DNA of 64,000 nt from Ostrea edulis. Lineage: Eukaryota. A model generated the notes under the pieces. That model searched no databases and had not been told where the DNA came from. It saw only the letters and a list, made by a program, of their open reading frames with translations. The stretch spans positions 31,310,001-31,374,000 of the forward strand of contig NC_079165.1 of assembly GCF_947568905.1 (NCBI RefSeq), read 5' to 3'. This document shows, piece by piece, positions 1 to 60,620 of this stretch (the stretch's first letter is position 1; every line of letters starts with the position of its first letter). The translations under genes and the position numbers were made by a program.

Positions 1-2790
1 TGCTTGAAGATCAGATATGTACTCATGGGTGTCAGACTCTGTTTCTTTGGTTGGGCAACATGTTACAGCTTCAAGAGGCATGGTGATATTCCTACCGAAT
101 ACCATTATATTTGGCGTAAAGTGTGTACTACTGTGAACTGAGGAAGGGTACGCCATCATTACTTGGGGTAGATACTCGTCCCATTTGTTCTGTTCTTTTT
201 CACAATGCATGGTAAGCATTGTTGCTAAGGTACGGTTAAAACGTTCAATATTTCCATTAATCTGGGGCCTCATACTTGTGGTTCTGATTTTGTCTATATG
301 AAAAAGTTGACACATTTGCTGGAAAAGCCGAGATTCAAAGTTGCGCCCTTGGTCAGAATGAATCTGGAGGGGAGTGCCAAAGCGACAAAGGAATTCATTG
401 ACTAAGGCTTTAACAACTGTCTCTGCCTCCTGTTTGGTATTGCATAGGCCTCTGTCCACTCGGTGAAACAGTCGCAGACAACTAGTATATACTTGCTGCC
501 TTTGAGGGATAGAGGAAGAGGACCCATGATGTCAATTTCAATCCTTTCCATCGGCTCACCAACTAAATACTGTCTAAGGGGTACAACTCTTTTGTCAACA
601 GGGTTCCTTCTGGCAGAACATCTAGAACAGGTTCTTATGTATTTTTCTACAGATTCTTTAAGGTTGGGCCAATAAAATTTATTTTTGATTCTTTCCAGGG
701 TCTTCTCAATGCCAAGATGACCAGCAGATGGAATGTCGTGGTAATACTTGATTACTTCAGACTGCTTTGTTAATGGTACAACTAAATGAGTTCTGGTTTC
801 TTTGTCATCAGATTCCCATTTTCTGTATAGCATTCCATCATGGATTTCCAATCTGTCCCATTGTCTCCACAATGTTTTCGCAGTGCCAGATAGGTGTGAA
901 ATATCATTCCAGGCAGGCCTTTCAGAAGAATCATCGAGGGGAGTCATGATTGGCGAAATATTCTGGTCTTGAAGCTGCAACAGACGTATCTCACTTGGTT
1001 CCCAACCTGATACCCAATACCACTGTATTCTGATAGGGGATTGGTACAGATTTCTTAGTTTGGTTTCTGGTAATAATGCACACACGATTTAACTCATGGT
1101 CTACTCCACTGGCTAAATTTTCTTCTTGGTCTGTCTCTGTATTTATGTCCTGTTGGCGATTACATGCTGTACGTGGTTTTCTGGACAAGGCATCTGCATT
1201 GTTGTGTTTGGCACCAGGGCGATGGACAACTGTGAGGTTATATGTTCCGAGTTCTTGCAACCATCTGGCAACCTGGCCTGTAGGGAGCTTTAGATTCCTC
1301 ATCCAGTTGACTGCAGTATTATCTGTTCGAAGCAATACAGGTTGATCATAAAGGTAGGGATGAAAATGCTTAAGTGTACTTATGACGGTCAACAGCTCCT
1401 TCCGTGTAATGCAATAGGATTGTTCTTGTCTACTCAGCGCTTTACTATAGTAAACTACAACTCTCTCCAAGCCATCATCCAATTGTGATAGTACTGCACC
1501 AACAACCATGTTGCTAGCATCTGTGTCTAAAATTAAGTTTTGATTAGGAACTGGGTGATATGAGAGCCTCTTTGAGTCTCTGAAAAGCTTTGGCACAATT
1601 TGCTGTCCACTCAAACTTCTTGTTTTTCTGCCAAGCAAGATGAAGTGGTCTTGCGATGTCTGCAAATGATTTGACGAATCTCCTATAGTACGAGCATAAT
1701 CCTAAAAAGCTTCGTATCTCCTTGACACTGGTTGGCTCAGGCCATTCTTGAACTGCTTTTGATTTGTCAGGGTCAGTGTGAACTCCCTCCTCGGAAACAA
1801 TGTGTCCTAATAAGTTGATTTTCTTTTGAAACAGGTTACATTTAGAAGGTTTTAACTTGAGATTGGTTGTTTGGAGCCTCATGAAAACATGTTCTAATCT
1901 CTGCAGGGCATCTGCTACTGTCTTTCCAGGTACAATGATATCATCTATATAGATAAGGCATTCGCGCCATTGAAGTCCATGGAACACATCTTCCATAAGT
2001 CTTTCGAAAGTTGAAGGAGAATTGGCAAGACCAAAGGGCATAACAGTAAATTGATAGAGACCTTGACTGGTGGAGAAAGCAGTCTTGTGTTTGTCTTCAG
2101 GAGCCATACCAATTTGCCAAAAACCAAAATTCAGGTCCATACAACTGAACCATTTTGAACCAGACCACGAATCCAGATACTCGTCAATACGTGGAAGGGG
2201 TAAGCATCTTTAACAGTGACGTCGTTCAGTTTGCAATAATCGATACAAAATCTAGTGGAACCATCTTTCTTGGTTACTAAAACAATAGGAGAGGACCACG
2301 CACTGTTTGAAGGTTCAATAACATTTCTGTGCAGCATATTTTCTAGTTCTTGTTTCTCAATCTCGCGTTTACCAAAGGGAAGTCGTCTGGGGGGCTGTCG
2401 AATAGGGTTAGCTGGGCCTGTATTGATTCTGTGCTGGACAAGGTATGTTCTGCCTATGTCATCCGAGGACTGAGAGAAGACACCTTTATATTTCATCAGG
2501 AGAGTCTCCAATTCCTTTGCTTCATCTTTCGTTAGATGTTGAGAGCTGCGTTCCAGAAGGTCAGTAAGGTGTTCAGGTAGTTTGGCTGGGATATTATCAT
2601 TGGTACTCTCAGGATGTTGACTTATCCTGCAACACGAGTTGGCATGATGTGTCTCGTAGTATGATTCGCAAGTGCCAAGGCTCATATTTGGGTAAAGAGT
2701 AACTGGAAAATCATTGAAATTTTGTACAACTGCAAACTGGTTCTTAGAGTGGTTGTTGATAATGCCAGAAATAAGTGCAAGGTGTCCATC
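1..2790 (-). pseudogene. pol: Gypsy pol (RT, RNase H, integrase), frameshifted; no protease motif seen
   Basis: ORFs 2131-2685, 1544-2140, 991-1665 and 402-1085; the integrase core continues in a shifted frame to base 1. Confidence 0.9.
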
Positions 2791-2800
2791 GAACTCCGAC

Positions 2801-3762
2801 CTATTGAGTCGACGGTTTGAAGTTTCCCTGGTTGTATGAGCCAGGCATATTGGAGCAACACGATTTGTCAGTATTCTGATTTTGCTGATTCCTAGGACAT
2901 TCCCTCATAAAATGATCTGGGGCTTGGCAAATGAAACAAGCTCTCGTATGTGGATTCTGTCTGCCATTAGGTCTAGATGACTGACCAGACTCTAATTTCT
3001 CAAGCCTTGACAGTATAGCTTTCAAGGTTTCCGATATCTCTGTTTGGGACACACTGGGACTGCCCTGCGTCTTCCTGGGTGCTTTATCATCGCTACCTAA
3101 GGCTCTGACAGGTTGTTTACGTTTTTCTCCGTCCTCCAAATCAGCTTCATATCGCTCAATGACTTCTACTGCGTCAGCAATAGTTTGGCAATCTTTGTCA
3201 ATGTAACGGCATTTCATCTCGAGGGATATGCTTTTGTAAAGTTGGTTAATGGAAAGAGCTTCCTGAGCTAAAGTTTTGGGTAAGCTTTCTGGGACATCTG
3301 TCGAAGATCATCAGCCAAGGCAGCTATAGATTCTGTTGGTTTACGTCGCCTGGATTCAAATTTGGAGAGCCACCGGTTCTGCTGTCGGGAGCTCCCAAAT
3401 CTCTGCTCAAGCTTGGTAATTAATATATTGTACGGCTGTCTGAACTCTGCAGGGAGACTTATGTAGAATGTGCGGGCAGGGCCTCGTAAACATGCTGCTA
3501 GGGCCAGGACCTTCTTGTGATCATTCCATCTTCCAAGTTCAGCACACACTTCAAAATGGGAGATGTACTCCTGCCAATCGTCACTGCCGTTGAAAGGCTC
3601 TGGTTTCAAGTTCAAACCTCGGGTTCCATGTGGTCTCCAATCACCTGCGCCACGTCTATTAAATTCAATGTCAATGTCATCTTCATGATCAGCAATAGAG
3701 TTGTCTGCAACTTCATTGTCCACCAGTATCTTAGCCATAACTTCAGGATCAGGGGATGCCAT
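2801..3762 (-). pseudogene. gag: Gypsy gag, split by a frameshift near 3270
   Basis: ORF 3268-3762 has capsid-like PEPFNG..DW..Y..HFE; ORF 2801-3217 has the CCHC knuckle. Confidence 0.9.
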
Positions 3763-5943: not shown

Positions 5944-6074
5944 AAGGTGAAGATAACGAACAGTGATCAATCACATAACTCCTACAAGCATACAAAATAG
6001 ATAGTTAGGCAAACACGGACGCCTGGACACACCAGAGGTGGGATCAGGTGCCTAGGAGGAGTAAGCATCCCCTG
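5944..6074 (-). mobile_element. Penelope-like (Naiad-type) element, 3' terminal fragment
   Basis: Reverse complement of the 3' UTR shared by the other copies (aaggtgaagataacgaacagtgatc...gtaagcatcccctg). Confidence 0.8.
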
Positions 6075-7114: not shown

Positions 7115-7438
7115 TGGTGGACTGTTAGTCCCCGAGGGTCTCTACAGCCCAGTAGCTAAGTACTTCGTTACTAGCTTGAAAATACGGATGTATATTTAAT
7201 TGATGTTATAAAATTTAGAAATTCATTTCAAAATTAAGGATTATCTCCCTCATGCATAGCTCTTATCCTTAGACGAATTTGGCTCCACTTGTTTGGTACG
7301 CTGTTTTTGGCTATATTTAGATCTAAAACTTCGTACTTATTTCGGATTTCAAACATTTCGGTTGAGCATCACTGAAGAGACATTATTTATCGAAATGCGC
7401 ATCTGGTGCATCAAAATTGATACCGTATAAGTGTTACA
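7115..7438 (+). mobile_element. Retrozyme repeat, copy 1 (less than one unit)
   Basis: Reverse complement of the 351-bp unit at 15038-15388; contains a hammerhead core. Confidence 0.85.
7362..7413 (+). ncRNA. Type I hammerhead ribozyme with one stem II mismatch
   Basis: ttgagcatca CTGAAGA gac-attattt-atc GAA atgcgcat C tggtgc-a-tcaa; predicted cleavage after 7403. Confidence 0.75.
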
Positions 7439-7985
7439 TTACATCCACTTTACTTTTAAAATGCTGATCTAAATTTGATTGATGAAAATAGAAACATCAA
7501 CCTTTAAACATAGTTTCCTTTATAATTAATTGAAAATTAAAGTTTACTAGAATTTCATTTCTCATGACGCTGATCGTGTAAGGAAATGTGATTTTAAAAA
7601 AAAGATTTCGAACTTAAAATAAAAATCAATAATATTATTTCCTGTTAAAATGTATTTTTCTTTGAATTTCACTTTTTTGGAGTTGATCATTCATGTATTT
7701 TGAGCAGTCTCGGAGTTTGAATTATCTTCGACTTGAGCATATTTAGAGAATTGAGAGAGTGAATTTTCTTTGAGTTGAGCATTTTAAAATTCTTGGAATC
7801 AAAATGTCTTGTTTCGAAACATTCAAGACAAACTTCCTGAAGAGCCGTAAGGCAAAGGTACAAGCAGGAACTGAAGAGCCGTAAGGCAAAGGTACTAGTA
7901 GAAACTGATCGTTCACTATTATGTGATCAATATGGATTTTATTCTTTTAAATTATTTAACAACTGTGCTATTTAACAACTGTGCT

Positions 7986-8203: not shown

Positions 8204-8425
8204 CAAACACGGACCCCTGGACATACCAGAGGTGGGATCAGGTGCCTAGGAGGAGTAAGCATCCCCTGTTGACCGGTCACACCCGCCGTGAGCCCTATAT
8301 CCTAATCAGATAAACGGAGTTATCCGCAGTCAAAGTCAGTGTGCCAAGAACGGCTTAACAATCGGTATGAAACACGTCAGACAGCATTTGACCCAATCCG
8401 AGGTTGTATTGACGAACTAGATCGT
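8204..8425 (-). mobile_element. Penelope-like (Naiad-type) 3' fragment
   Basis: Matches the family 3' UTR and RT C-terminus in reverse orientation. A short plus-strand terminal piece also lies at 8591-8637. Confidence 0.8.
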
Positions 8426-8908
8426 ATATAGTTTTTAGTTAAGAATAAAATATCTTATGGTTTAAAGTAAAGTTTCTTGCTTATTTTTTCAACACGACCA
8501 GTCGGACTAGTAAATCGACATTTTACCCGACCAGGCCTATCATTTAGTAGACTCAGTCGGTCGGACGTGCCTTAATGTCAAACCCTGCCGGCTTATAGGA
8601 GTTATGAGATTGATCACTGTTCATTATCTTCACCTTTCCTTTAGAACAGATCTTGATACATAGTCATATTGTGATTGACAATCACTCTGATTTAAAAGTT
8701 AACTTTTTAAAAAATGTGTTCATAAGTTTTCTTTGTATTTCCCCCAATTGTAATGTGCAATGTAATTCATTCCTTTAGCAAAGTAATTTAATTAATTACT
8801 AATAAGAATGAAAGTAATGGTAATTGTAATTGAAATGGTGAAAATTCCAATGGAATTGTAATTTAATACATTACATTTTAAAGTAATTGACCCCAGGTCT
8901 GTATACAT

Positions 8909-9454: not shown

Positions 9455-10328
9455 AATTTTCATTTATATGTCGATTCGATATAAGCCTATCCCAATGAAC
9501 TCGAAATAAAACACACTACAGAGTCATCCACTTCTGCTTCATACTTAGATATTTTATTGAAAATGGATATTAACAGCAAACTAACAACTCAACTTTATGA
9601 TGAATGGGATAAATTTCAGCTTCTCCATCGTCAACTTTCCATATTTATGTAGCAATATTCCGCTATCACCTGCATGTGGTGTTAATATCTCTCAACTGAT
9701 TCGACACGCAAGAGCTTGTTCTGCGTATGATCAGTTTTTAAATTGAGGCAGGCTACTGACAAACAAGTTAATGATGCAGGGGTTTCAACAGTCTCGTTTA
9801 AAGTCAGCATTTCGCAAATTCTATGGTCTATATAACAATATAGTTTGCTAATACAACCTATCATTGGGTCAAATGCTGTCTGACTTGTTTCATACCGATT
9901 GTTCGGCCGTTTTTGGCACACTGGTTTGACTACGGATATCTCCGTTTATCTGGCCCCAAGACCACAGACTGAAAATAGATTAAAGTCAAAATTGTGATTA
10001 CTTATATCTTAATTAAGAATTATCTAGCACAGATATTTGAAAAAAATATATATAAAAAAGATTAAATTCATTCATATACTGAAAATAGTATTTGTTTATG
10101 AAAGTTATTGCAAAAGTTAGCTGGATTTGAAATTTAGACTTAAGTCTATTATCATTTTATGGTCTTGAGGCCTGATCAAGATATAGGGCTCAGTCAGGAG
10201 ATGGTCAGTCCTCCTGGGCACGTGATACCACCTCTGGTGTGTCCAGGGGTCCGTGTTTGCCCAACTCTCTATTTTGTATTGCTTATAGGAGTTATGAGAT
10301 TGATCACTGTTCGTTATATTCACCTTTC
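9455..10328 (+). mobile_element. Penelope-like (Naiad-type) RT C-terminus and 3' UTR, interrupted by a MITE
   Basis: Degenerate translation resembling SASYLDIL...LYD...IVNFPYLCSNIPLSPA.GV.ISQLIR.ARAC, followed by the family 3' UTR. Confidence 0.85.
9953..10171. mobile_element. MITE with 3-bp CTG target duplication (PIF/Harbinger-like)
   Basis: TIRs gccccaagacc / ggtcttgaggc; ctg at 9950-9952 and 10172-10174; removing it restores the host sequence. Confidence 0.7.
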
Positions 10329-10489
10329 ATGCAACTACTTGTGTAGATTTTTCAATATTAATAGATAGATAGATAAATGGATAGATAAATAGATTGATTG
10401 AGACCATGAGAAATATTTCCCTACATTTATTTTTTTCAATTAACATTCCTTGCGCATCTCAAATAAGAATTATGTAGAAGAGACTCTGA

Positions 10490-14404: not shown

Positions 14405-14500
14405 CTAGGAACCTGATCCCACCAGGAATCCGTGTTTGCCCAACTCTCCATTCCTTATAGGAATTATGAGATTGATCATTGTTCATTATCTTCACCTTTC
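14405..14500 (+). mobile_element. Penelope-like (Naiad-type) 3' terminal fragment, degenerate
   Basis: cctgatcccacc...ccgtgtttgcccaact...ttatcttcacctt. Confidence 0.7.
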
Positions 14501-15036
14501 TTGTGATCTCGGAAATCCTGTTTCGAAAGTGAAGATACCAAATTCACTACAGAAGTTTGATTAGATTAAATGCAGGAAATATTCAAATTCAAATGCTTTA
14601 TTGACGATTACCAAACATGAGGCGTACATCATAAATTAACATCACATATTAGTATATATATATAACACAATACACATTTTCAGATTAACCACAATTGTCC
14701 TGATTTCTCAATGCAGTGTACCTTAGATTAAAACACCCATTCAAATACTGACAAAAATGTTTTGTGAATGTATAATGTCTAGGATTCATGAGGCTTTTTA
14801 TGGAATTTGCATTCAAATCACCCAAATGTTCTGAATATTTTTTCTTAAATGATAGTATTTTGTACAAAATAATAGGAAGTGTTTCTCATCCTCAACTTCA
14901 TTCAAGCAGAATTTGCAAAATCTATTAGATCGTGGAATTGGAGGTGTACAGCATCTCCCAACCTCAATATTGAGGGGATGTGCACTTAGTCACGATTGAA
15001 GTCAGCATTTCGCAAATTCTATGGTCGTTATAACGA

Positions 15037-15602
15037 TGTAAAACTTATACGGTACCAATTTTGATGCACCAGATGCGCATTTCGACAAATAATGTCTCTT
15101 CAGTGATGCTCAACCGAAATCTTTGAAATCCAAAATAACTATGAAGTTTTAGAGCTAAATATAGGCAAAAACAGCGTGCCAAAAAAGTGGAGCCAAATTC
15201 GTCTAAGGATAAGAGCTATGCATGAGGGAGATAATCCTTAATTTTGAAATGAATTTCTAAATTTTGTAGCAGCAATTAAATACACATCCGTATTTTCAAG
15301 CTAGTAACGAAGTACTTAGCTACTGAGCTGTAGAGACCCTCGGGGACTAACAGTCCACCAGCAGAGGCCTCGACCCAGGGGTCATAGTGTAAAACCAAAA
15401 TAACTATGAAGTTTTAGATCTAAATATAGCCAAAAACAGCGTGCCAAAAAAGTGGAGCCAAATTCGTCCAAGGATAAGAGCTATGCATGAGGGAGATAAT
15501 CCTTAATTTTGAAATGAATTTCTAAATTTTGTAACAGCAATTAAATATACATCCGTATTTTCAAGCTAGTAACGAAGTACTTAGCTACTGGACTGTAGAG
15601 AT
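15037..15602 (-). mobile_element. Retrozyme array, copy 2: one 351-bp unit plus an internally deleted partial unit
   Basis: Unit starts gtaaaac at 15038 and 15389; hammerhead at 15061-15113. Confidence 0.9.
15061..15113 (-). ncRNA. Type I hammerhead ribozyme, intact core
   Basis: Minus strand ttgagcatca CTGAAGA gac-attattt-gtc GAA atgcgcat C tggtgc-a-tcaa; predicted cleavage between 15072 and 15071. Confidence 0.85.
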
Positions 15603-16113
15603 CTAGTTCGTCAACGGCAAAATTGACAACTCAACTGTATGACAAACGGGATTATTTTACTTCTCCATCATCAACTTCCCATATTTATGTAGCAATATTC
15701 CATTATCACCTGCATGTAGTGTTTATATCTCTCAACTGAGGCAAGCTACTGACAAACAAGTTGATGGTACAGGGGTTTCAACAGTCTCGATCGAAGTCAG
15801 CATTTCGCAAATTCTATGGTCATTATAACGATCTAGTTCGTCAATACAACCTATCATTGGGTCAAATGCTGCCTGACGTGTTTCATACCGATTGTTAGGC
15901 CGTTCTTGGCACACTGACTTTGACTACGGATAACTCCGTTTACCTGATCAGAATATAGGGCTCATGGCGGGTCTGATCTGTCGACAGGTGATGCTTACTC
16001 CTCCTAGGCACCTGATCCCACCTCTGGTGTGTCCAGGGGTCCGTGTTTACCCGACTATCTATTTTGTATTGCTTATAGGAGTTATGAGATTGATCACTGT
16101 TCGTTATCTTCCC
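15601..16113 (+). mobile_element. Penelope-like (Naiad-type) RT C-terminus and 3' UTR; a related short piece lies at 14997-15037
   Basis: LYDKRD...IINFPYLCSNIPLSPA motif and complete 3' UTR. Confidence 0.85.
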
Positions 16114-16674
16114 CTTTAGATCTGTAAGCTTTTGGTAATGTAAATTTCAAATATTCTTGCAATTTAAAATTATAATTGTATACTTGGCTATAAAATACAA
16201 GTTTTCCACAATTAGTTTGTTTTATGTTATCAAATTGATTACATATTTTATTTTCATAATACATGTAGTTTCTTGCTAAATGTTTCATGGGAAATCGCTA
16301 AAGAGGAAAGTCCAATCATCTTTGTAATAATACTCATTGATTTAGTCATGCTTGGACTAGTTTTTATATGAGATAATTTTTCATCCTCTTCAAAAGCATC
16401 AATTAACAATGGGTTATTATTTTGGGATGCAAATTCCATATTTTTTAACCTACAGTAATATTTAAAAATTGATTCATATATCTTAATGTGTATAGGATAT
16501 AGACCTAATTCCAAAAGTACTGCAACATTAAAAGCTTTCTTATGAACACCTGGTATGTCTTTCAAAATAGTATTTTGTACTTTCTCAAAAGGCAACTTTG
16601 ATTGGCTATTTATGTCAATCTTAAAATCAGTAATCCAGATTTCAGATGAATGTAAAACTTATACGGTACCAATT

Positions 16675-16727
16675 TTGATGCACCAGATGCGCATTTCGAC
16701 AAATAAAGTCTCTTCAGTGATGCTCAA
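16675..16727 (-). ncRNA. Type I hammerhead ribozyme, intact core
   Basis: CTGAAGA gac-tttattt-gtc GAA atgcgcat C tggtgc; predicted cleavage between 16686 and 16685. Confidence 0.85.
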
Positions 16728-17032
16728 CCGAAATTTTTAAAATCCGAAATAACAGTAAACTTGTAGGACCTAAGAGCTATTTTAGGGGAAAACAGAGTGC
16801 CAAAAAAAGTGGAGTCAAATTTGTCCAAGGATAAGAGCTATGCATGAGGGAGATAATCCTTAATTTTGAAATTAATTTTTAAATTTTATCACAGCAATTC
16901 AATATACATCCGTTTTTAAAGCTAGTAAGGAAGTACTTAGCTACTGGGCTGTAGAGATCCTCGGGGACTAACAGTCCACCAGCAGAGGCCTCGGCCCAGG
17001 GGTCATAGTGTAAAACTTATACGGTACCAATT

Positions 17033-17085
17033 TTGATGCACCAGATGCACATTTCGACAAATAATGTCTCTTCAGTGATGCTCAA
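17033..17085 (-). ncRNA. Type I hammerhead ribozyme, stem III variant atgtgcat
   Basis: Core intact; one C-to-T change in stem III. Confidence 0.8.
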
Positions 17086-18144
17086 CCGAAATTTTTGAAA
17101 TCCGAAATAACAGTAAACTTGTGGGCCCTAAGAGCTATTTTAGGGAAAAACAAAGTGCCAAAAAAGTGGAGTTGAATTTGTCTAAGGATAAGAGCTATGC
17201 ACGAGGGAGATGATATGTAACAATAGGTAATATGAGAGCCTGATACATTTTAAGCCATACTTGGACAGAAAGATCATTTGAAAAAGGTATTTTAGATTTA
17301 ATTGAAGAATAAGCCTAGCTTTATCCTCAAGGCTAGCACTTGCTTGTCTTAAACTTCCATTTGATGAAAATATTGATCCTAAATATTTATATTCAACAAT
17401 ATCTCTTCCAAAATAAAAACAAAATGGTTCATTGTTAATCTTTCTCTTTGAGAAAATCATAACTTTTGTCTTATCAAGATTTACATCCAACTTCCAATAT
17501 TTGCAGTAATCCTTTAACCCATTTAGACAATGCTGGAGACCAGATGATGACTCTGAAATCAGTATTAAGTCGTCTGCACAAAATAGATGATTAATAAGAA
17601 TAGTATTTAGTATTGCAGGTTCTGTTTTCTCTAAATCTAAATATTCTTGAAAATCATCAATGAACATGTTGAAAAGTGTCGGACTGAGATTATCGCCTTG
17701 TTTTACTCCGATATGGTATCAAATGGCTCACTTTGATAATAACTATCTTTACAAGCACATATAGTTGATGAATACATGTCTTGTAATATTTTTGCAAACT
17801 TCCCCCTATTCCTTCTTATAATATTTTCAGTATCATTGATGATCTCCATACATAATCATAAGCTTTCCTAAAGTCTACGTGACATGCAAATAGTTTTTGT
17901 TTTTTAACACGTCAAATACTTATTCACAAAAGTTTTAAAAATAAATATGTTATCTGAAGCTCTGTGATTTCTTCTAAAGCCTGACTGATGTGGACTCAAC
18001 AAATCATTTTCTTCTAAATAGTCATTCAGTCTCTTTTGTAGTAACCCATTAAATAATTTTCCTAGGCAGCTTGATACACTAAGTCCTCTATAATTATTAG
18101 TATTAGTAAATATTGACCTTGATATTTTGTTTTACTTCAGGAAG

Positions 18145-21100: not shown

Positions 21101-23121
21101 TATACTGGAGACGACATTCTCAATATAATTCCTGGATCAAATGCAAATATATACGAATATTGGTTGACTAATCTCACACTGAACACCGATAATATCCTTC
21201 TGTTGTGTACAACAAATGTTGTGGGTAGAAATTGCAGTTCCACATTCAAAATAAAAATGGACAAACCTCTATCTATAACTTTGCAAGGTATGTTGTATTT
21301 TTTATCTTGTACCAGCCATAAATTCATCTTCTTAAAATCAAATATCACGAGAAAGAAATGGGATGTAAATTAGAAAAATCTAGATACATCAGGAGATTGT
21401 TTTCTCTTACACAGTCGGAAATACTTTCACATATATCAGACCTACCTATGAATCATGAAGAACATTGGAAAATTATGACCTGGTTAAATTTGATTCTTAA
21501 AATGATATTCGTCTTCTCCATGTTAGCTTACTATAACTTCCTATCAATGACAACTTTCAGCCAATCAAGTGATATCGGAAACGACTTTGATCCCTGTTGT
21601 TGTTGGTTGTGTGGGACTTCCGAGCATCCTTGTCTTTATTCTGATTGCCTGGAATCGAAGAAAGCATTGTAAAAGTAATCAATTGTTTTTGTATTTGACC
21701 TGTTCAATTCATGAAATAGTCTAATACATTCACTGATTCACGTATTATACTTAACTGGTGATTTGTTTGTTTTTATACAGGCAGAAGTCTCGTCTCCCTA
21801 GAAAGGTAAAAACATTTCGAAGATTTAATCTCGAGGAAAGTATACGCTTTAATTTTTTGCCTTTGATTACGAATTTTCCATCGTCAACTTCCCAAATTTA
21901 TGTAACAATATTCCATTATCATCTGTACATGGTGTTTATACATCTCAACTGATTCGATACACAATAGCTTGTTCTACGTATGGTCAGTTTTTAAATCGAG
22001 GCAAGCTATTGACAAACAAGGTGATGGCACAGGGGTTTCAACAGTCTCGATCGAAGTCAGCATTTCGCAACTTCTATGGTCGTTACAACGATCTAGTTCG
22101 TCGATACAACTTATCATTGTGTCAAATGCTGTCTGATGTGTTTCATACCGATTGTTAGGCCGTTCTTGGCACACTGATTGTGACTACGGATAACTCAGTT
22201 TATCTGATCAGGATATAGGGCTCAAAGCGGGTGTAGCCGGTCGAAAGGGAATGCTTACTCCTCCTGGGCACCTGATCCAACCTCTTGTTTGTCCAGGGGT
22301 CCTTTTCTGCCCAACTATCTATTTTGTATTGCTTATAGGAGTTATGAGATTGATCACTGTTCGTTATATTCACCTTTCATTGATAATTAACGTTACATGA
22401 CAATAAGTTGGACAAAAGGCACTTAAAAGCTGTATGGTCCGAATTACAATATTTTTTCTCCATGTGGTAAAAACGCTATTAAATCATCGCACGTATGTAG
22501 TTATGAGGCTGTATGACATATCATACATTATTTCACCTGTTTCAACCCAAATTATTTGATTTTAAATCGATGTTTACAAATAACTGCGTCACTCTGCCAT
22601 TTCAAGTGATAGTCATGTGACCAGTTCAAACTTTCATATCAGCGGTGGTCTTATCTGTGTATTTTGTTACAACAGTACCGTGCCATAAGTTTAATAGAAA
22701 TGTAAATATCAAACACCTCTTAGACGAGTTAGTACATCATGTTCGGATTCCCCTGACGCACGTGGGTCTATTTATAGACGTCTATCATGGAATGATTCAT
22801 ATATGTACCACATTTATTTACTTTCTAAATAATATTCTCACTATTTTCTTTTACATGCAGATATTTTCAAGCATGCAATTAAGGGAAAGTTAATAACTTT
22901 ATAAAGTAATTGATTTGCTTTAAAGTAATAATGCACAAAAATAATACATGAACATCGGGTCATACAGCTTTAAGGTAACTGTGTTGTTATAGATGGACTC
23001 ACTCTGAGACTTGGTTAAAGAATACTAGGATGCATAGAATGATGAAACGTTGGGTAATTTAACAGTCTTTAAAACAATCCGACATATAAAAGTCCGTATT
23101 TCATCTTAATGTTATGATTCT

Positions 23122-23175
<54 letters not shown>

Positions 23176-26100
23176 TGCTTTTTACAGACAAAATGCTTCC
23201 TTGGGAAGGAATAGTTATTCGATGCAAAGACTGACTAATGGTAACATTTCAATCAAATTGCGTGAACACTTTCATCATATGAAATATTGTGTCCAGTTTT
23301 AGCATTTGAATTAAATTATTTGTTGAATTTTAGATTACGGGTCCTCGGAAAATAACCGTGAAAGGTAAGATGATTTAATAAGGTAATTATAGTAGAATTA
23401 AAGAATTCTGTTATAATGATAATAATAATAAAGCCTTTATTTATCCAGGATTACATATTTAGCGATAACGCTAGTTTTCAATATGGTCCTGCATATAACA
23501 TACATACAGACAGTTATTAGTAAAATAAACACAGATTAATAGAAGTAGAATACATATAAACTTAAGAAATAATTATGAATGTAAGATATTAAATAGGAAC
23601 AAAATGAATCTTAAAAAGTATGGTGATAATCTCTAAGATAATTTCTCTTAAAACACACAACACTTGTTGAGTTTCTTATATTTTGACTCAAGGCATTCCA
23701 CAGTGTGCTTCCTGAAATGCTCAAAGATCTTCTATAATATTCTGTTTTTGCCCTGGTTATATACAATATATTTGAATAAGAATTTCTAGTTTGCCTCTGA
23801 CTGACTTCTGATACATATTTAAAAACATTTAAATAATCTGGCATTGAACCATGTAAAACTTTATACACTAAAATGACTTTTCTATAGACAAAGTAATCTG
23901 AAAGAGGCAACCAGTTAAGTTCTGTAAACATGATATTAGATGGTGTTTCAAAATTTCTAATGTTAAGAATTACCCTTGCAGCTCGTTTTTGCAATATAAA
24001 AAGCTTATTCACATTTTCAGCATTTCTTGGATTGCTCCATATAGTACAATATGTAAAATGTGGAAAAATCATAGTATTAAAAATCTTCAGCAGCGCATCG
24101 TTTGACATAAAATATCTTATTCTTCTTAAAATGCCAATTCTCTTAATGATTTTATCGGAATGTATGAACAATGATTAAACGTTTAATAGAATGTATGAAT
24201 GTATTCCGTATATTATGAAAAATACAACTACAGAAACCTCAATCGCCCATAGGAACCATGATGTGTTGTTTTTCTTTTGCTAGGACATTGGACCTCTCTA
24301 CTGACACTTACCTGACACAACAATGCCTGATCTCACCGGAATCGCAATCACAATCACGTAAGTAGTTTGATACACGATCCTTTACCCATTCCTTGTGTTG
24401 CACTTAGTTTAGCCTTGCTGTTAAATTGACCAAATATAGAATATTCCTCTTGAACAACCCTAAAGCTCAGTTATAACCTAGAACTTCTAGATGTTGGAAT
24501 TTGTTTTATAGATTTTAATTTATTGATTGTTCACATCTTTTTTTATTTGTCCATTCGATTTCAATGAACCCGAAATAAAACACCCCACAGAGTCTTTCAT
24601 ATCTGCTTAACACTTGGATAGTTCATTAAACATACAGATGTTAACGGGAAACTAATAATCCAACTTAATGACAAATGGGATTATTTCAGATTCGCTATCG
24701 TCAATTTTCCATATTTATGAATTAATGTTTTATCATCAAGGGGAAGATAACGAACAGTGATCAATCTCATAACTCCTATAAGTAATACAAAATAGATAGT
24801 TGGGCAAACACGGACCCCTGGACACACCAAAGGTGGGATCAAGTGCCTAGGAGGAGTAAGCATCCCCTGTTGACCGGTCACACCCGCCGTGAACCCTATA
24901 TCCTGATCAAGTAAACGGAGTTATCCGCAGTCAAAATCGGTGTGCCAAGAACGGCTTAACAATCGGTATGAAACACGTCAGACAGCATTTGACCCAATGC
25001 GATATTGTATTGACGAATTAGATCGTTATAACGACGATAGAATTTGCGAAATGCTGACTTCAATCGAGACTGTTGAAACCCCTGTACCATCAACCTGTTT
25101 GTCAGTAGCTTACCTCGATTTAAAAACTGACTATACGCAGAACAAGCTCTTGCATATCGAATCAGTTCACATAAATAAACACCATATGCAGGTGATAATG
25201 GAATATTGCTACATAAATATGGGAAGTTAACGATGGTAGAAGCTTAAATCATCCCGTTTGTCATATAGTTGGGTTGTCTGTTTGCCGTTAATGTCTACTT
25301 TCAATAAAATATCTAAGTATGAAGCAGAAGTGGACGACTCTGTGGTGTCCTTTATTTCGAGCTCACAGGGATATATCAAATCGACATATGAATGAAAGCT
25401 ATTATTGTAAATAGACAAAACATCATCGATATATCTAAATGTCGAATTGAAGGCCACAGCGAGAGATTTTCAACTGCATATGGTATTTATGTCTCAACTG
25501 ATTGAATACGCAAAAGCATGTTATGCGTATGATAAGTTTTCATAACGAGACAATCTACTGACAAATAAGTTAGAGTTACAGGTGGTCCAACAGTCTTGTT
25601 TAAAGTCAGCATTTCGCTAATTCTATAGTCGTTATAACGATCTATTTAGAAATGCAACCTGTCGTGTTTTATATCAATTATTAGGCCGTTCTTTACATAC
25701 TGGTTTTGAATACGGATTACTACGTTATCCCAATCAAGATATAGAAGTCATGGCGAGTGTGACCGATCTACAAGGGGTGCTTACTTCTCTTAGGCACCTG
25801 ATCCCACCTCTGGTGTGTCCAGGATTCCGTGTTTACCCTACTCTTAATCTTGCATTCTTTATTGAAATTATGAGACTGATATTACTGTTCTTTATAAGTC
25901 CCCTACCGACGAAGTTTGCGCTCCCTCCGTCCGTCCGTCTGTCTGTCTGTCCGTCAGTCCTGAAAATCAGTTTTCCGGACTTTTTTATGGGCATGCAGAT
26001 ATTCATTTGATATTTGGTACATCGCTTTGCCATAGCAAGTTACAGATCAAGTTCGAATTTCGTCTCGGTCCGTTGATTTTTCACCCAGTTATGGTCCTTG

Positions 26101-40192: not shown

Positions 40193-41722
40193 TTAAGAAT
40201 GCAGCCAACTTTCACATACATGAGTCACGGTCTGATTGACCTTATCCACAATGACGTCGATTGGAATGTAGGTGTAAAAATCTGGAAACTCGTTTTGAGG
40301 GTCCCTGTTTTGCCACCTCAAGTAATTTAGATTCCTCCATTGTGCCATGGCTCGGAAGTGATTGTTCTTAGTAGATAAATATCGTGGGTAAAGTTCTATC
40401 AAAGAGGCATGTTTAGGAAGGAGAAGAGTGTATGAAAGACCAGCACCGTGCATCCCAACGAGTATGTCCGTGTTAGCAATGACGTCCAGTTGTTCTTTCA
40501 TGGTCAGTTTGTCAATCTGCATTCCGTTTACCTTGTGATATGGGAAGACTTGTTGCACAGCTCTTTGCATTTCCATTTCGTTTCTTATCTTGCGCTTGAT
40601 TATTCCTCGAGGGTTTCGAGGATGGGAAACATAATCTCTACGCCAAATAAATAGAATTGACAAATTTTCACAGTTAAGTTGTTTACTGTCTTGAACACTA
40701 TATCTTCTAAGAAAAAATTCGCGGAATTCTTCCAGGTATGGAACATGAGGCAACGAATGCTGGTTTATCAGGCTATTATACCCAGTTATACTCCATACAA
40801 GATCTTTGTACGTTGTGGTTTTTGACAAGTGACCCGCTCGGGTCACATGACCGAAAAGTGTTTCCCATGCACTATCGAGTCCACCAGTTGGGTGACTGTC
40901 AATCAAAAGAATAGAGGTAGTATCCGGATCCTTCCTAAAAATTAAAAGCATCAGAAAGGCGTTGAACCAGTCTGTCATGACATGATACATGTTTACATAC
41001 TCGTATCGGGTTACAGCTATCGTGAAGTTATTTATCATTGTTGTTGTCTGTTTTATGTTGTCTGTTGTTGTTTTAACGACAGCAAGCCAGAGTCGTAAGT
41101 GATCTTTTGGTTTGAAGTCATATAGCAACCGTCGACCTTGACAACTAATCTGGAAATATCCTCTATCCAGAATTACGTATTCGTGTTTCTCGGGTTGACC
41201 TATGACCTTTTCTATTGATTCTCCTCCCCTTCTTCCAAAAGAGCGCATTGGATTTAACGTAACGTTCTTTAAGTGAGCAAACAGATTCCTGTAGCCCACA
41301 AAATTACCATTACACAGTTCACGTTTAGTCTCAATCCAGAGGTTCATGGGATCAAGGTCTATAGAGAAATTTGGTTGTAGGTACGCAAGCGCAGACCGCA
41401 TCTTCCTCTGCTGTTCTACTGAGACAATATCTGACGAATCTTCCGTCTGCGATTTGTTTGCTAGTGACAAATTTCTAATCGAAAGTTCCGTTTGATCTTC
41501 TTGTGGCAAAACAGAAATTCGATTACTGTGGAATAAGAAAAGGGCACACAAATAAATGTAGACCAGGGAACCTACCGCTAATGATCGTCTTATACATGTA
41601 CTATTCACAGTTAGTCCTCTCTTCAAGATGGCAACGCCTTTCAGAAAGAACTCCAGAGAAATGAGTAAAATTCGTAGACTAAAGACAAATCGCAGTGTTC
41701 TCCAAACCAAATTATTTGGCAT
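40193..41722 (-). CDS. Glycosyltransferase family 61 (DUF563) protein, beta-1,2-xylosyltransferase-like, intronless CDS
   Basis: 509-aa ORF; N-terminal TM anchor; motifs TRYEYVNMYHVMTDWF, WRRDYVSHPR and DILVGMHGAGL. Confidence 0.9.
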   Translation of the reverse strand: MPNNLVWRTLRFVFSLRILLISLEFFLKGVAILKRGLTVNSTCIRRSLAVGSLVYIYLCALFLFHSNRISVLPQEDQTELSIRNLSLANKSQTEDSSDIVSVEQQRKMRSALAYLQPNFSIDLDPMNLWIETKRELCNGNFVGYRNLFAHLKNVTLNPMRSFGRRGGESIEKVIGQPEKHEYVILDRGYFQISCQGRRLLYDFKPKDHLRLWLAVVKTTTDNIKQTTTMINNFTIAVTRYEYVNMYHVMTDWFNAFLMLLIFRKDPDTTSILLIDSHPTGGLDSAWETLFGHVTRAGHLSKTTTYKDLVWSITGYNSLINQHSLPHVPYLEEFREFFLRRYSVQDSKQLNCENLSILFIWRRDYVSHPRNPRGIIKRKIRNEMEMQRAVQQVFPYHKVNGMQIDKLTMKEQLDVIANTDILVGMHGAGLSYTLLLPKHASLIELYPRYLSTKNNHFRAMAQWRNLNYLRWQNRDPQNEFPDFYTYIPIDVIVDKVNQTVTHVCESWLHS

Positions 41723-44599: not shown

Positions 44600-45887
44600 G
44601 TGTACCAATTTTAGTAGATTTTTACATTTCACACATTCACAGTATGCCCTGATGATATCACTGTAGATGGAGTAGGTGGGAGACGTATACTCCATCACTC
44701 CGATGTTGTTCTGACGAAGTCTGTCCTTCACCTGCTGAATGCGCTGGTCCAGCTGCTGGTATTTCCTTTTCCTATGTCTTACTATACCTCTGCTATCAAG
44801 TGGAATCATTTTGGCCTCATTAGAAGCCTGCGCTCTTTGGATTATCTGGATGAAGAAGAAGATATTTGGATGAGGTCGTCGACACATAACATTCAATTTG
44901 TTATGCCATCCCTCCACTACGTTGGTTGATTGTTAAGTGAGTCCAGTGGCGGAGGTGGCCTTCAACCCAGATCTCGGTTACGTAGTCCTTAAATCACAGC
45001 ACATTCTCCACGATGTTTTCGGGTACCAAGGGAACAACAGTCGCTCTCCTTACAAGTTGATGGAAATATTCATCCTCTCTAAACGTAACCTCCAGTCCAG
45101 TGGATTGAACTTTCCTCCATTTGCGCTGTGTGTAGTGAAAGAAGCATCCCTTGGTGGAAGTTAGCAGAAAACTGGCTCGGATTGCGTTATGAGCGGCAAC
45201 TTCGGAATCCAGGATCCAATGTCCTGGTGTCAGCATAGACGGTCTCTCATGGACTGCATTCTTCAGGAGAGTAGAGAAGCGCTCGTACGTGTCCTCAGTC
45301 TTGTTTGACAGCAATCCAAACACAAGAGGAAATACAGTTCCATTTACTTTAGCATAGAGAATGTACAGTTGAGTGAACAATGTCGAGCAGGAATGAAATG
45401 TCCCATCACTAAACATCATCTCTGAAGCGCATAGTTTCACCAAATTGGCATCGGTAGCAAACACTAGTATACGGTCCCCTTGAGGATCGATATTCTCACA
45501 GAGTAGAAGCATTTTCCCGGCCAAAGTTCTGCCCTATGTTCCCTAGGTGTCGATCTCTTCTTGGGATGTTGGCAGTTCCGGTGTGGTCTTGGCACAGCTT
45601 TTGCATTAGGAGGGACTACATGCCTGGAATGTTGGAATCCAGCACAGTATTGTCATATTCTGTGTTCCGAAGTCCTCCAAACTCCTCATCATGAATAGCA
45701 TGGTGTTATTTCTACTCTATAACACTTCTTCACACCGGGCCACTGATGGAAGATTCAGCACCCAGACGACCAAGTGGGGGGTCTGCCAAAGTCACAAGGA
45801 TATTTTCAGATGTTGTCACAGTAGCAGGACGTTGTCAACACACCGCGAGTATTTTCTTTCGTTGTGGTAGTTGATTATGAATAGCAT
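44600..45887 (-). pseudogene. MULE (Mutator-like) transposase relic
   Basis: SDGTF, PLVFGLL..K...Y, GCFFHYTQ and EGWHNKLN motifs; stops and frameshifts. Confidence 0.85.
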
Positions 45888-46825: not shown

Positions 46826-46997
46826 AGATCAGGATATAGGGCTCACGGCGGGTGTGACAGGTCAACAGGGGATGCTTACTCCTCCTAGGCACCTGATCCC
46901 ACCCCTGGTGTGTCCAAGGGTCCGTGTTTGCCCAACTATCTATTTTGTATTGCTTATAGGAGTTATGAGATTGATCACTGTTCGTTATCTTCACCTT
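46826..46997 (+). mobile_element. Penelope-like (Naiad-type) 3' UTR fragment
   Basis: Near-consensus 3' terminal ~170 bp. Confidence 0.85.
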
Positions 46998-59383: not shown

Positions 59384-60620
59384 ATGAAGATAACGAACAG
59401 TGATCGATCTTATAATTCCTGTAAAGAATACAAAAGTGAGAGTTGGGCAAACACGGACCCCTGGACAGGCCAGAGGTGGGATCAGGTGTCTAGGAGGATT
59501 AAACATCTCCTGTTCACCGTTTACACCCACTGTGAGCCCTATATCTTTATGAGGTAAACGAAATAATCCGTAGTCAAAATTAGTATGTAAAGGACGGCCT
59601 ACAAATTGGTATGAAACACGTCAGATAGCATTCGACCCAGTTGCTTGTACTAGCAAATTATACCATCATAACGGCCATAAAACTTGCGAAAAGCTAACTG
59701 TAACATCAACATATTTGACAGTAACCTGCATCGATTTAAAAACTGTCATACGCAGAATATGCTCTTGCGTATCGAATCATTTGAGAGACATGCATACCAC
59801 ATACAGGTGATAATGGAATATTGCTACATAAAAATGGGAAGTTGACGATGGAGAAGCTGAAGTCATCCTGTTAGCCATAAAGTTGAGTTGTTAGTTTGCT
59901 GTTAACATCTGTGTTCAACAAAATATCCGAGTATGAAGCAGATGTGGAAGATCCTGTGGTGTTTCATCGGGATTTGTCGAATCAAAGTATGAATGAAAAT
60001 TATTGTTAATGAATAAAACGTCGTGATATATCTAAATGTCATGTTGAAGGCCACGGTAAGATATTTTATAGATAACTGATGGGGTGTTTTTTACTCAATT
60101 AAACACATAACACGGTTTGAGGAATTAGAATGGTCATTTATTACTAATAAATGACAAAGTATTTTGCCAAAAAATCATATAAAACAGTTAGAAAAATAAC
60201 AAACTAAAAACACAATACTGCAATTCATGCTAAGGAATTGTGACTAATAAAACATTACAAAAATGCCACAATCCTAAAAACTACAATATAAAAAATCATA
60301 AATACAATATTATGACTAGAAAAAACCTCAAGTTATAAGAGCAGATACTTTGGAAAATTGCATATACAAAAAATGTCAAAGATTGGGTATCTTCTGCCCG
60401 GTAATATATTTTTTCTGTTTAGGTAGAAGCTTTTGAACAAATTCTGCCTCGTAAGAATATCAAACGGGTCAGCTAAAAAAGGAGCACAGTTCATGTCCAT
60501 GGGAAGTCCAATAGCCTGTTGGAAGAACTTGATCACCAAAGACTACGTAGATATTATCATTGAGGAACTCCAGCATCTTTTAAATATCAATTTTAGAGTA
60601 CTTGTGTGTAGAATCGGAGT
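59384..60620 (-). mobile_element. Penelope-like (Naiad-type) fragments: 59384-60056 and RT motif region 60370-60620
   Basis: 3' UTR, FRYI.DV region and FQQAIGLPMDMNCAPFLAD (degenerate IPMGTNCAP). Confidence 0.8.

What the first reader, a model, noticed from the sequence alone, without database searches (positions are those of the whole stretch)
7404..7438. All three retrozyme insertions end exactly 35 nt downstream of the cleavage site, consistent with copying of a circular RNA
Seen: in ribozyme orientation each insertion ends at ...ccgtataag(t/g)tttaca. The segments are 7404-7438, 15037-15071 and 16651-16685, each 35 nt. The 5' ends vary (324, ~565 and ~560 bp total). Inference: a fixed 3' end with variable 5' truncation indicates target-primed reverse transcription from a defined start. 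On a linear cleaved monomer, RT starting at +35 would run off after 35 nt. Lengths above one unit require a circular or multimeric template, which points to rolling-circle RT from a defined priming site.
Basis: partly seen in the sequence, partly recalled or inferred. Interest (0 to 1): 0.8.

Follow-up and report, generated by a model that had tools for sequence, protein, structure and literature searches.

The report
Oyster retrozyme copies share fixed end
Thousands of copies of a small non-coding oyster jumping element with a self-cutting hammerhead RNA motif all stop at the same spot about 35 bases past the cut site. This shows that copying back into DNA starts at one fixed place on an RNA longer than one unit, but not whether that RNA is a circle.

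Summary
The three window copies (7115-7438 +, 15037-15603 -, 16651-17214 -) belong to a 358-nt hammerhead retrozyme family and all end ...TTTTACA, 35 nt past the predicted cut.

- **3' ends:** In 77 fetched loci, 56 of 58 independent copies end at this site. The 3'-terminal 20-mer occurs 10,144 times in the genome.
- **Exact end position:** It is ambiguous between +34 and +36. The next two bases (A, T) match both the next unit and the target, and short target duplications often begin with AT.
- **5' ends:** They are scattered, giving lengths from 48 nt to 3.2 units.
- **True insertions:** The flanks differ between copies. Copy 2 has paralogous empty sites in the window, and copy 3 splits a LINE reverse-transcriptase ORF.
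- **Cut site:** Neither 5' nor 3' ends pile up there, so the template was intact across the ribozyme.

The data support target-primed reverse transcription from a fixed internal RNA site, as shown in vitro for a Penelope-like element in 2024. Circular RNA versus uncleaved multimer remains unresolved.

The circle model was published in 2014 and 2020, and other agents in this scan have already described this family. This is a new member of a known kind, with a useful mechanistic detail.

The parts
7115..7438 (+). Retrozyme copy 1, 0.9 unit (unit positions 28-358), 5'-truncated
   Evidence: BLAST to the reference unit, 88% identity; alignment A1
7366..7409 (+). Hammerhead motif of copy 1. Predicted cut between 7403 and 7404. 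Helix II carries one mismatch (TATC instead of TGTC).
   Evidence: Sequence read directly; no Rfam hit
7404..7438 (+). The reported 35-nt segment from the cut site to the 3' end of copy 1. The next bases, TTA, also match the next unit.
15037..15603 (-). Retrozyme copy 2, 567 bp: one full unit plus an upstream partial unit (50-263). Its internal junction lacks unit positions 264-351, including that hammerhead.
   Evidence: the deleted junction is unique in the genome
15066..15109 (-). Hammerhead motif of copy 2 (cut between 15072 and 15071); 35-nt segment 15037-15071
16651..17214 (-). Retrozyme copy 3, 564 bp = 1.57 units, used as the reference (unit = 16651-17008)
16680..16723 (-). Hammerhead motif of the 3' unit of copy 3 (cut between 16686 and 16685); 35-nt segment 16651-16685
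17038..17081 (-). Second hammerhead motif of copy 3 (upstream unit; one change in the helix III palindrome)
15783..15870 (-). Paralogous empty site for copy 2 in a neighbouring copy of the host repeat. It reads ...GACGAACTAG ATC GTTATAA...; ATC occurs once here and on both sides of copy 2.
   Evidence: further empty paralogues at 24985-25075 (+) and 22040-22130 (-)
17215..17667 (-). LINE-type reverse-transcriptase ORF piece that runs into the 5' end of copy 3. It appears to continue in the ORF 16254-16595 on the other side of the insertion.
   Evidence: Pfam RVT_1 E=8e-8; ORF list

Best explanation
These are insertions of a roughly 10,000-plus-copy, non-coding, 358-nt hammerhead retrozyme of an oyster genome.

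Proposed mechanism. An endonuclease nicks the target, preferentially next to an AT. The freed DNA 3' end pairs with the AU at unit positions 358-359 of the retrozyme RNA. A reverse transcriptase then starts copying at C357/A358, which is 34-36 nt downstream of the ribozyme cut site. Copying runs upstream for a variable distance (48 nt to more than 3 units) and is then joined to the other side of the break, often through a few bases of microhomology. This leaves target duplications of 0 to about 9 bp.

What is shown by the DNA.
- The fixed 3' junction.
- The scattered 5' ends.
- The empty sites.
- The template was continuous across the ribozyme site just upstream of the start.

What is inferred.
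- The enzyme is that of a Penelope-like element (about 0.6). These elements carry the same type of hammerhead and start reverse transcription internally at fixed RNA sites.
- The template is the religated monomeric circular RNA, copied round and round (about 0.5), and not an uncleaved multimeric transcript.
For: - Fixed 3' end: 56 of 58 independent copies. After TTTTAC there is A in 49/55 and T in 46/55, then background composition.
- Word counts: 3' word 10,144, junction word 3,041, mid-unit word 4,481. This gives a 3'-anchored coverage gradient, which a satellite with random borders would not show.
- True insertions: empty paralogous sites for copy 2 with ATC duplicated; copy 3 sits inside a LINE RT ORF; L061 holds a nested inverted copy with a TTAT duplication.
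- Target duplications: anchored duplications of 5-8 bp occur in 17 of 57 copies, against 7 expected from shuffled pairs. Many begin with the AT.
- No cleaved-RNA footprint: 71 against 61 discontinuities at the cut site and at a control position. Only 40 copies break right after C323.
- Passing the unit border: in the sample picked by the unit's middle, 18 of 31 independent insertions reach a full unit or more, and 13 of 31 exceed it. Yet genomic copies of two or more units are rare, and no cluster with more than 3 terminal words or more than 2 consecutive junction words appeared in the listed stretches. This favours an effectively endless template.
- Ribozyme design: helix III is a 2-bp stem with a palindromic loop. 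The monomer fold is -5.2 kcal/mol and the intermolecular duplex -11.9 kcal/mol. This is the dimer-dependent design that should leave monomeric circles uncut (PMC4209133).
- Literature: PMC11167929 reports internal RT initiation at fixed sites in a Penelope-like element. PMC7229834 reports that mussel retrozymes are abundant circRNAs and proposes target-primed copying of circles. Preprint 10.64898/2026.07.22.740005 derives vertebrate retrozymes from Penelope pLTRs.
- A Penelope-like family in this same genome (L077) likewise has a hammerhead followed by a fixed end about 92 nt further on.
Against: - No autonomous element sharing this 3' end was found. None of about 100 local hammerhead-plus-tail instances is preceded by coding sequence.
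- No head-to-head inverted pairs and no second start site ('tail'), both typical of Penelope-like insertions, appeared in about 58 copies.
- Here the primer seems to share 2 nt with the RNA, whereas the in vitro Penelope study reports no homology.
- Nothing in the DNA distinguishes a circle from an uncleaved multimer. There is no extra stop after exactly one round, which a circle with a bound nascent cDNA might be expected to cause.
- Rfam does not score the hammerhead, and self-cleavage was not tested.
- No RNA evidence was obtained.
Confidence: 0.45

Rival explanations
1. The same fixed-start target-primed reverse transcription, but on linear, uncleaved multimeric transcripts of a few long genomic arrays (master loci), not on circular RNA.
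For: The DNA product would be identical. Copying passes the unit border smoothly, with no extra stop after one round. In the Penelope-like element studied in vitro, unprocessed RNA was the main substrate and ribozyme mutants did not affect insertion (PMC11167929). The dimer-type hammerhead is a weak cutter (PMC4209133).
Against: Copies of two or more units are a small minority, and no long array appeared in the listed stretches. Templates would therefore have to come from rare long loci. No 5' transduction of source flanks was seen in about 58 copies. In mussels, related retrozyme RNA is mostly circular (PMC7229834).
Confidence: 0.3
2. A SINE-like element mobilised by a LINE that recognises its 3' end. 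[quoted passage not shown]
For: Fixed 3' end, 5' truncation and short variable target duplications are also LINE/SINE hallmarks. LINEs are present nearby.
Against: There is no A-rich or simple-repeat tail: 2 of 55 flanks are A-rich. The same site is read through at 3,041 internal junctions, so it is not an obligatory RNA end. Type I hammerheads are a hallmark of Penelope-like elements and retrozymes, not of LINEs (PMC4209133, PMC7229834). No LINE with this tail was seen.
Confidence: 0.1
3. Not retrotransposition: fragments of a tandem satellite spread by segmental duplication or DNA-level recombination.
For: Some copies are duplicated together with their flanks. L008/L016 and L020/L027 are such pairs, and one copy starting at unit position 28 is carried inside another repeat at 6 or more loci.
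Against: Nearly all copies have unrelated flanks. Copy 2 has precise empty sites. 56 of 58 copies share one end while their 5' ends scatter. Coverage falls 3.3-fold across the unit border.
Confidence: 0.03

Closest known systems
Metazoan non-LTR retrozymes (Cervera and de la Pena 2020, PMC7229834), especially the roughly 350-390-bp Mytilus galloprovincialis family
   Same: Short non-coding unit (358 nt, 38.5% GC); one type I hammerhead per unit; thousands of dispersed copies in short head-to-tail runs; no LTR, PBS or PPT; bivalve host.
   Different: Here most copies are less than 2 units, not longer tandems. I saw no description, in the papers I read, of one precise 3' border 34-36 nt past the cut. 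circRNA expression was not tested here. Sequence homology to the mussel family was asserted by another agent of this scan and not tested by me.
Penelope-like elements with internal initiation of reverse transcription (Frangieh et al. 2024, PMC11167929; Craig et al. 2021, PMC8557442)
   Same: A hammerhead lies upstream of a fixed reverse-transcription start. Insertion 3' ends fall at that internal RNA site. Copies are 5'-truncated, more-than-unit and head-to-tail. Targets are AT-type. Target duplications are variable.
   Different: No ORF. The start is about 35 nt from the cut, against about 85-92 nt in the Anolis element and about 92 nt in the oyster family of L077. There is a single start site, so no 30-40-bp 'tail'. 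No head-to-head inverted pairs were seen. There is an apparent 2-nt AT microhomology.
Plant LTR retrozymes (PMC4918200)
   Same: Non-autonomous elements with hammerhead-delimited RNA that circularises and is thought to be the reverse-transcription template.
   Different: The plant elements have type III hammerheads inside LTRs, a PBS and PPT, 4-bp duplications and Gypsy-type mobilisation. None of these apply here.
SINEs with LINE-derived tails
   Same: Non-coding, 3'-anchored, 5'-truncated, high copy number.
   Different: No tail repeat or poly(A). There are multi-unit copies. A hammerhead is present.

Membership tests
Type I hammerhead ribozyme (metazoan form with minimal helix III) | Conserved core: CUGANGA, GAAA, A15.1-U16.1, cleavage after H17, G10.1-C11.1 | tested here: met
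   CTGAAGA ... G-ACA/TGT-C ... GAAA ... A-TGCGCA-T C| read in all four motifs of the window and in about 100 local instances. This region is the best-conserved part of the unit: 0.98 against 0.94 majority fraction.
Type I hammerhead ribozyme (metazoan form with minimal helix III) | Helices I (about 6 bp) and II (about 4 bp); short helix III with a palindromic loop | tested here: met
   Helix I 6 bp including one G-U pair; helix II 4 bp; helix III 2 bp plus a GCGC loop. The fold energy is -5.2 kcal/mol, which is not the MFE. The intermolecular helix III is -11.9 kcal/mol. Covariation was not assessed because the copies are too similar.
Type I hammerhead ribozyme (metazoan form with minimal helix III) | Match to the curated Rfam hammerhead models | tested here: not met
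   No hit at gathering score on the window, and none at E up to 10 on 16600-17260.
Type I hammerhead ribozyme (metazoan form with minimal helix III) | Self-cleavage | not testable with these tools
   Needs in vitro transcription of a dimeric construct.
Metazoan non-LTR retrozyme | Non-coding 150-450-bp unit, low GC, hammerhead in each unit, head-to-tail copies, high copy number | tested here: met
   358 nt; GC 38.5%; longest stop-free stretch 45 aa; 1 to 3.2 units per copy; 10,144 terminal words.
Metazoan non-LTR retrozyme | Expressed as unit-length circular RNA | not testable with these tools
Non-autonomous passenger of a Penelope-like element | Insertions end at a fixed internal RNA site downstream of the hammerhead, with 5' truncation | tested here: met
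   56 of 58 copies.
Non-autonomous passenger of a Penelope-like element | An autonomous element in the same genome shares the 3' (pLTR/hammerhead) region | tested here: inconclusive
   None among the local instances. The one Penelope-like family examined (L077) has a different hammerhead and a different end.
Non-autonomous passenger of a Penelope-like element | Head-to-head inverted twin insertions and a 30-40-bp 'tail' | tested here: not met
   None in about 58 copies. The two inverted arrangements found (L045, L061) are tail-to-tail or nested.
LINE-dependent SINE | A-rich or simple-repeat 3' tail; 3' end shared with a LINE | tested here: not met
   3' flanks have background composition, and 2 of 55 are A-rich. 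No LINE partner was seen, and the search for one was not exhaustive.

The most novel reading that the evidence does not exclude
The oyster family is a genome-scale record of rolling-circle, target-primed reverse transcription in an animal. On this reading, a Penelope-type enzyme primes on a 2-nt AU at one fixed position 34-36 nt past the hammerhead cut of a religated circular RNA and runs round it up to three times. This would make the start site, the template form and the processivity of retrozyme mobilisation directly measurable from DNA.
Probability: 0.35. Interest if true: 0.6.

Novelty: new member of a known kind. Interest (0 to 1): 0.4.

Why it matters
How animal retrozymes move is still stated as unknown in the latest work I could read (preprint 10.64898/2026.07.22.740005). 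This family gives a clean, nucleotide-level answer to one part of that question. Copying starts at one internal RNA position just downstream of the ribozyme, on RNA that is intact across the ribozyme site, and cleaved linear RNA leaves no trace. That links retrozymes to the internal-initiation behaviour found in vitro for a Penelope-like element. It also supplies a defined start site and a short RNA for testing circle against multimer templates at the bench.

Tried and rejected
- **Rfam scans** gave no hammerhead hit. I kept the call on core and helix inspection only.
- **Unbiased fetch.** I tried to fetch the first 79 genomic clusters of the terminal word. The end statistics therefore rest on 77 loci plus whole-genome word counts.
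- **Copy 2's deleted internal junction as a marker of a heritable linear template.** The junction is unique in the genome. It is a one-off event and uninformative.
- **Pile-up of 5' ends at the cut site.** Rejected: 71 against 61.
- **3' ends at the cut site.** Rejected: 40, about half of them a CATC...CATC slip deletion.
- **Excess of exactly one-unit copies as a circle signature.** The local hint (about 5-6 per sample) was not borne out: 21 discontinuities at unit position 2.
- **Calibrating word counts by local intact fractions**. The results were inconsistent because the samples are biased, so I report raw counts only.
- **Partner search.** The Penelope-like element at L077 has another hammerhead and ends about 92 nt after its cut, in (TA)n. 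A GIY-YIG hit in L070 lies on the other strand, 1.2 kb away. Same-strand pairs of terminal words 3.4-4.4 kb apart on C1 (5 seen, about 1.7 expected) could not be inspected.
- **Pol III termination at the TTTT run as the cause of the fixed end.** Rejected, because copies carry ACA(T) after the T run.

Full report
**What is there**

The window carries three copies of a 358-nt non-coding repeat: 7115-7438 (+), 15037-15603 (-) and 16651-17214 (-). I use window:16651-17008:- as the reference unit.

Each unit holds a type I hammerhead motif:
- helix I GCATCA / TGGTGC
- core CTGAAGA
- helix II GACA-TTATT-TGTC
- GAAA
- a 2-bp helix III closed by the palindrome in ATGCGCAT
- C, followed by the cut after unit position 323

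This is the "canonical metazoan" architecture described in PMC4209133: helix I 6 bp, helix II 4 bp, helix III 1-2 bp with a palindromic loop, active as a dimer. The monomeric ribozyme fold is weak (-5.2 kcal/mol, not the MFE). Two copies can form an 8-bp intermolecular helix III (-11.9 kcal/mol).

Rfam does not score the motif, either at gathering thresholds or at E up to 10. The hammerhead call therefore rests on inspection and on its conservation across copies. The unit has 38.5% GC and no ORF longer than 45 codons.

**The observation**

The cuts fall at 7403|7404, 15072|15071 and 16686|16685, and each copy continues for 35 nt to ...TTTTACA. The lengths are 324, 567 and 564 bp. The flanks of the three copies are unrelated, so they are not segmental duplicates.

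Copy 2 lies in a host repeat that has several other copies in the window. Four of these show the uninterrupted site ...CTAG ATC GTTA.... ATC stands on both sides of copy 2.

Copy 3 splits a LINE-type reverse-transcriptase ORF (RVT_1, E = 8e-8). That ORF seems to resume on the other side of the insertion. I scanned only the upstream piece, by reference, and did not join the two pieces.

**Genome-wide**

The window is G000:C2:31310001-31374000 of an 895-Mb assembly. Earlier notes of this scan call it an oyster.

I examined two samples of 40 loci. One was picked by similarity to the whole unit. The other was picked by unit positions 101-250 only, and is therefore blind to where copies end. After removing duplicates, 56 of 58 independent copies end within a few bases of the same point. 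The two exceptions are a 48-nt fragment ending at position 351 and a copy abutting an inverted fragment.

Whole-genome exact word counts agree:

| Word | Hits |
|---|---|
| 3'-terminal 20-mer (339-358) | 10,144 (reversed control 0) |
| Word spanning the junction into a next unit | 3,041 |
| Mid-unit 20-mer (161-180) | 4,481 |

In the first 5.6 Mb of contig 1, 25 of 100 terminal words continue exactly into a next unit. A satellite with random borders would give flat coverage. This is a 3'-anchored gradient with a sharp step at the unit border.

**Where exactly is the end?**

Internal unit junctions in the family read TTTTAC-AT-TATGACC (22 of 25).

In terminal copies the base after TTTTAC is A in 49 of 55 and the next is T in 46 of 55. 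After that the composition is background. Short direct repeats flanking the insertions exceed the shuffled control: 17 against 7 with 5 or more bp. Many of them begin with this AT, as does the ATC of copy 2.

So the AT is shared by RNA and target. The RNA-templated part ends between +34 and +36, and in a minority at +38 (ATTA).

The simplest reading is a nick next to an AT, 2-nt pairing with A358-U359 of the RNA, and extension from C357.

**5' ends and lengths**

5' ends are spread over the whole unit. Lengths run from 48 nt to 1,150 nt, which is 3.2 units.

In the sample blind to length above 258 nt, 13 of 31 independent insertions are shorter than a unit, 5 are about one unit, and 13 are longer. 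Some local clustering appears at unit positions near 256, 281, 303, 314 and 337, in and around the hammerhead. The numbers are small.

**Does ribozyme cleavage leave a footprint?**

No.
- Copies with a discontinuity immediately 5' of T324 number 71, against 61 at a control position 3 nt away. Many of the 71 look like 1-2-nt deletions.
- Copies that break immediately after C323 number 40. About half of them are a slip deletion between two CATC repeats.

The template was intact across the ribozyme site just upstream of the start. It was either never cut or cut and religated.

**Circle or multimer?**

The DNA cannot tell directly.

In favour of an effectively endless template such as a circle:
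- More than half of the cDNAs that reach unit position 100 go on past the unit border.
- Genomic copies of two or more units are a small minority.
- No cluster of more than three terminal words, or more than two consecutive junction words, was seen in the listed stretches.
- The dimer-type hammerhead should spare monomeric circles.
- In mussels, related RNAs are mostly circular (PMC7229834).

Against, or neutral:
- There is no extra stop after exactly one round: 21 discontinuities at unit position 2.
- In the one Penelope-like element studied in vitro, unprocessed RNA was the main substrate (PMC11167929).
- The internal junction of copy 2, which lacks positions 264-351, is unique in the genome and so says nothing about heritable templates.
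- One copy (L032) has a 21-nt deletion that starts exactly at the cut site. This could be a template jump onto a cleaved RNA end, but it is a single case.

I put the circle at about one half.

**Which enzyme?**

Type I hammerheads of this kind are a hallmark of Penelope-like elements and retrozymes (PMC4209133, PMC7229834). Vertebrate retrozymes are related to Penelope pLTRs (preprint 10.64898/2026.07.22.740005). A Penelope-like reverse transcriptase starts internally at fixed RNA sites that coincide with genomic insertion ends (PMC11167929).

In this genome, the Penelope-like family at L077 shows the same layout at a different spacing. It has a GIY-YIG domain (E = 5e-6) and its own hammerhead. 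Its copies end about 92 nt after that cut, in (TA)n tracts.

I did not find an autonomous element that shares this retrozyme's end. I also saw no head-to-head twins and no second start site. The Penelope link is therefore inferred, at about 0.6.

A LINE partner is unlikely. There is no A-rich or repeat tail, and the "end" is read through at thousands of internal junctions.

**Comparison and novelty**

The element is a member of the metazoan non-LTR retrozyme class. The idea that hammerhead circles serve as templates for more-than-unit, target-primed reverse transcription is published (2014, 2020). Other agents of this scan had already filed this family as an ordinary retrozyme and noted that only one end is fixed.

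What this analysis adds:
- nucleotide-level definition of the start, +34 to +36, with AT microhomology
- its generality, across thousands of copies
- the absence of any cleaved-RNA footprint

None of these did I find in the papers I read.

**Limits**

- Word counts are not corrected for unequal conservation. My attempt at correction was inconsistent.

Noticed in passing
L032 (G000:C5:80103877-80107026), element at about 1401-1745: A one-unit copy with a 21-nt internal deletion (unit positions 324-344) that begins exactly at the predicted ribozyme cut: ...GCGCATC|GTATAAG.... This could be a template jump onto the 3' end of a cleaved RNA. It is a single case.
   Followed up: partly
L061 (G000:C2:16794310-16797458), about 1320-1893: A 121-nt inverted retrozyme copy with the canonical 3' end is nested inside another copy at unit position 303-306, with a TTAT duplication and a 9-nt filler. 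The family therefore inserts into itself.
   Followed up: partly
L023, L046, L050, L052, L053, L062 (six loci on C1, C2, C4, C6): The same retrozyme copy (unit 28-358) with identical flanks on both sides recurs on several chromosomes. This one copy has evidently been carried along inside another mobile repeat. Copy 1 of the window also starts at unit position 28 but has different flanks.
   Followed up: partly
L077 4502-4902 (-) = G000:C2:16597501-16597901: A Penelope-like family (GIY-YIG domain with a zinc-finger linker, its own minimal hammerhead) has 878 or more candidate copies. These end about 92 nt after the cut in ...TTTACAAAC, directly followed by (TA)n and often by an inverted piece. 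Both this family and the retrozyme end in a TTTAC(A) motif.
   Followed up: partly
G000:C1, pairs of terminal words at 1568398/1572778, 1698694/1702112, 4027327/4030811, 4965903/4969587, 5405225/5409357: Five same-strand pairs of the retrozyme's terminal 20-mer lie 3.4-4.4 kb apart, where about 1.7 are expected by chance. This could be local clustering, or it could be an ORF-bearing element flanked by retrozyme-like repeats, which would make it a candidate autonomous partner. The sequence could not be fetched.
   Followed up: no
window 7837-7900 (+): Two tandem 34-nt repeats, each holding CTGAAGAG-CC-GTAA-GG-CAAAGG. This looks hammerhead-like (core plus a GNRA-capped helix II) but lacks the G of GAAA. 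It lies 400 bp downstream of copy 1 and just before an N gap.
   Followed up: no
window 14415-15036 and 15604-16120; also 5944-6074, 8205-8637, 9578-10331, 21874-22378, 24661-25289, 25547-25895, 46827-46997, 59386-59906: A dispersed host repeat of about 0.5 kb has ten or more copies in the window. Copy 2 of the retrozyme landed in one of them, and the others provide the empty sites.
   Followed up: partly
window 402-2685 (-): A decayed LTR-retrotransposon pol region: integrase zinc finger and core, RNase H, RT and possibly a protease, in four consecutive ORFs.
   Followed up: no
window 44994-45524 (-) and 40193-41722 (-): A MULE transposase domain ORF, and an intronless 509-aa ORF with a glycosyltransferase 61 domain.
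   Followed up: no
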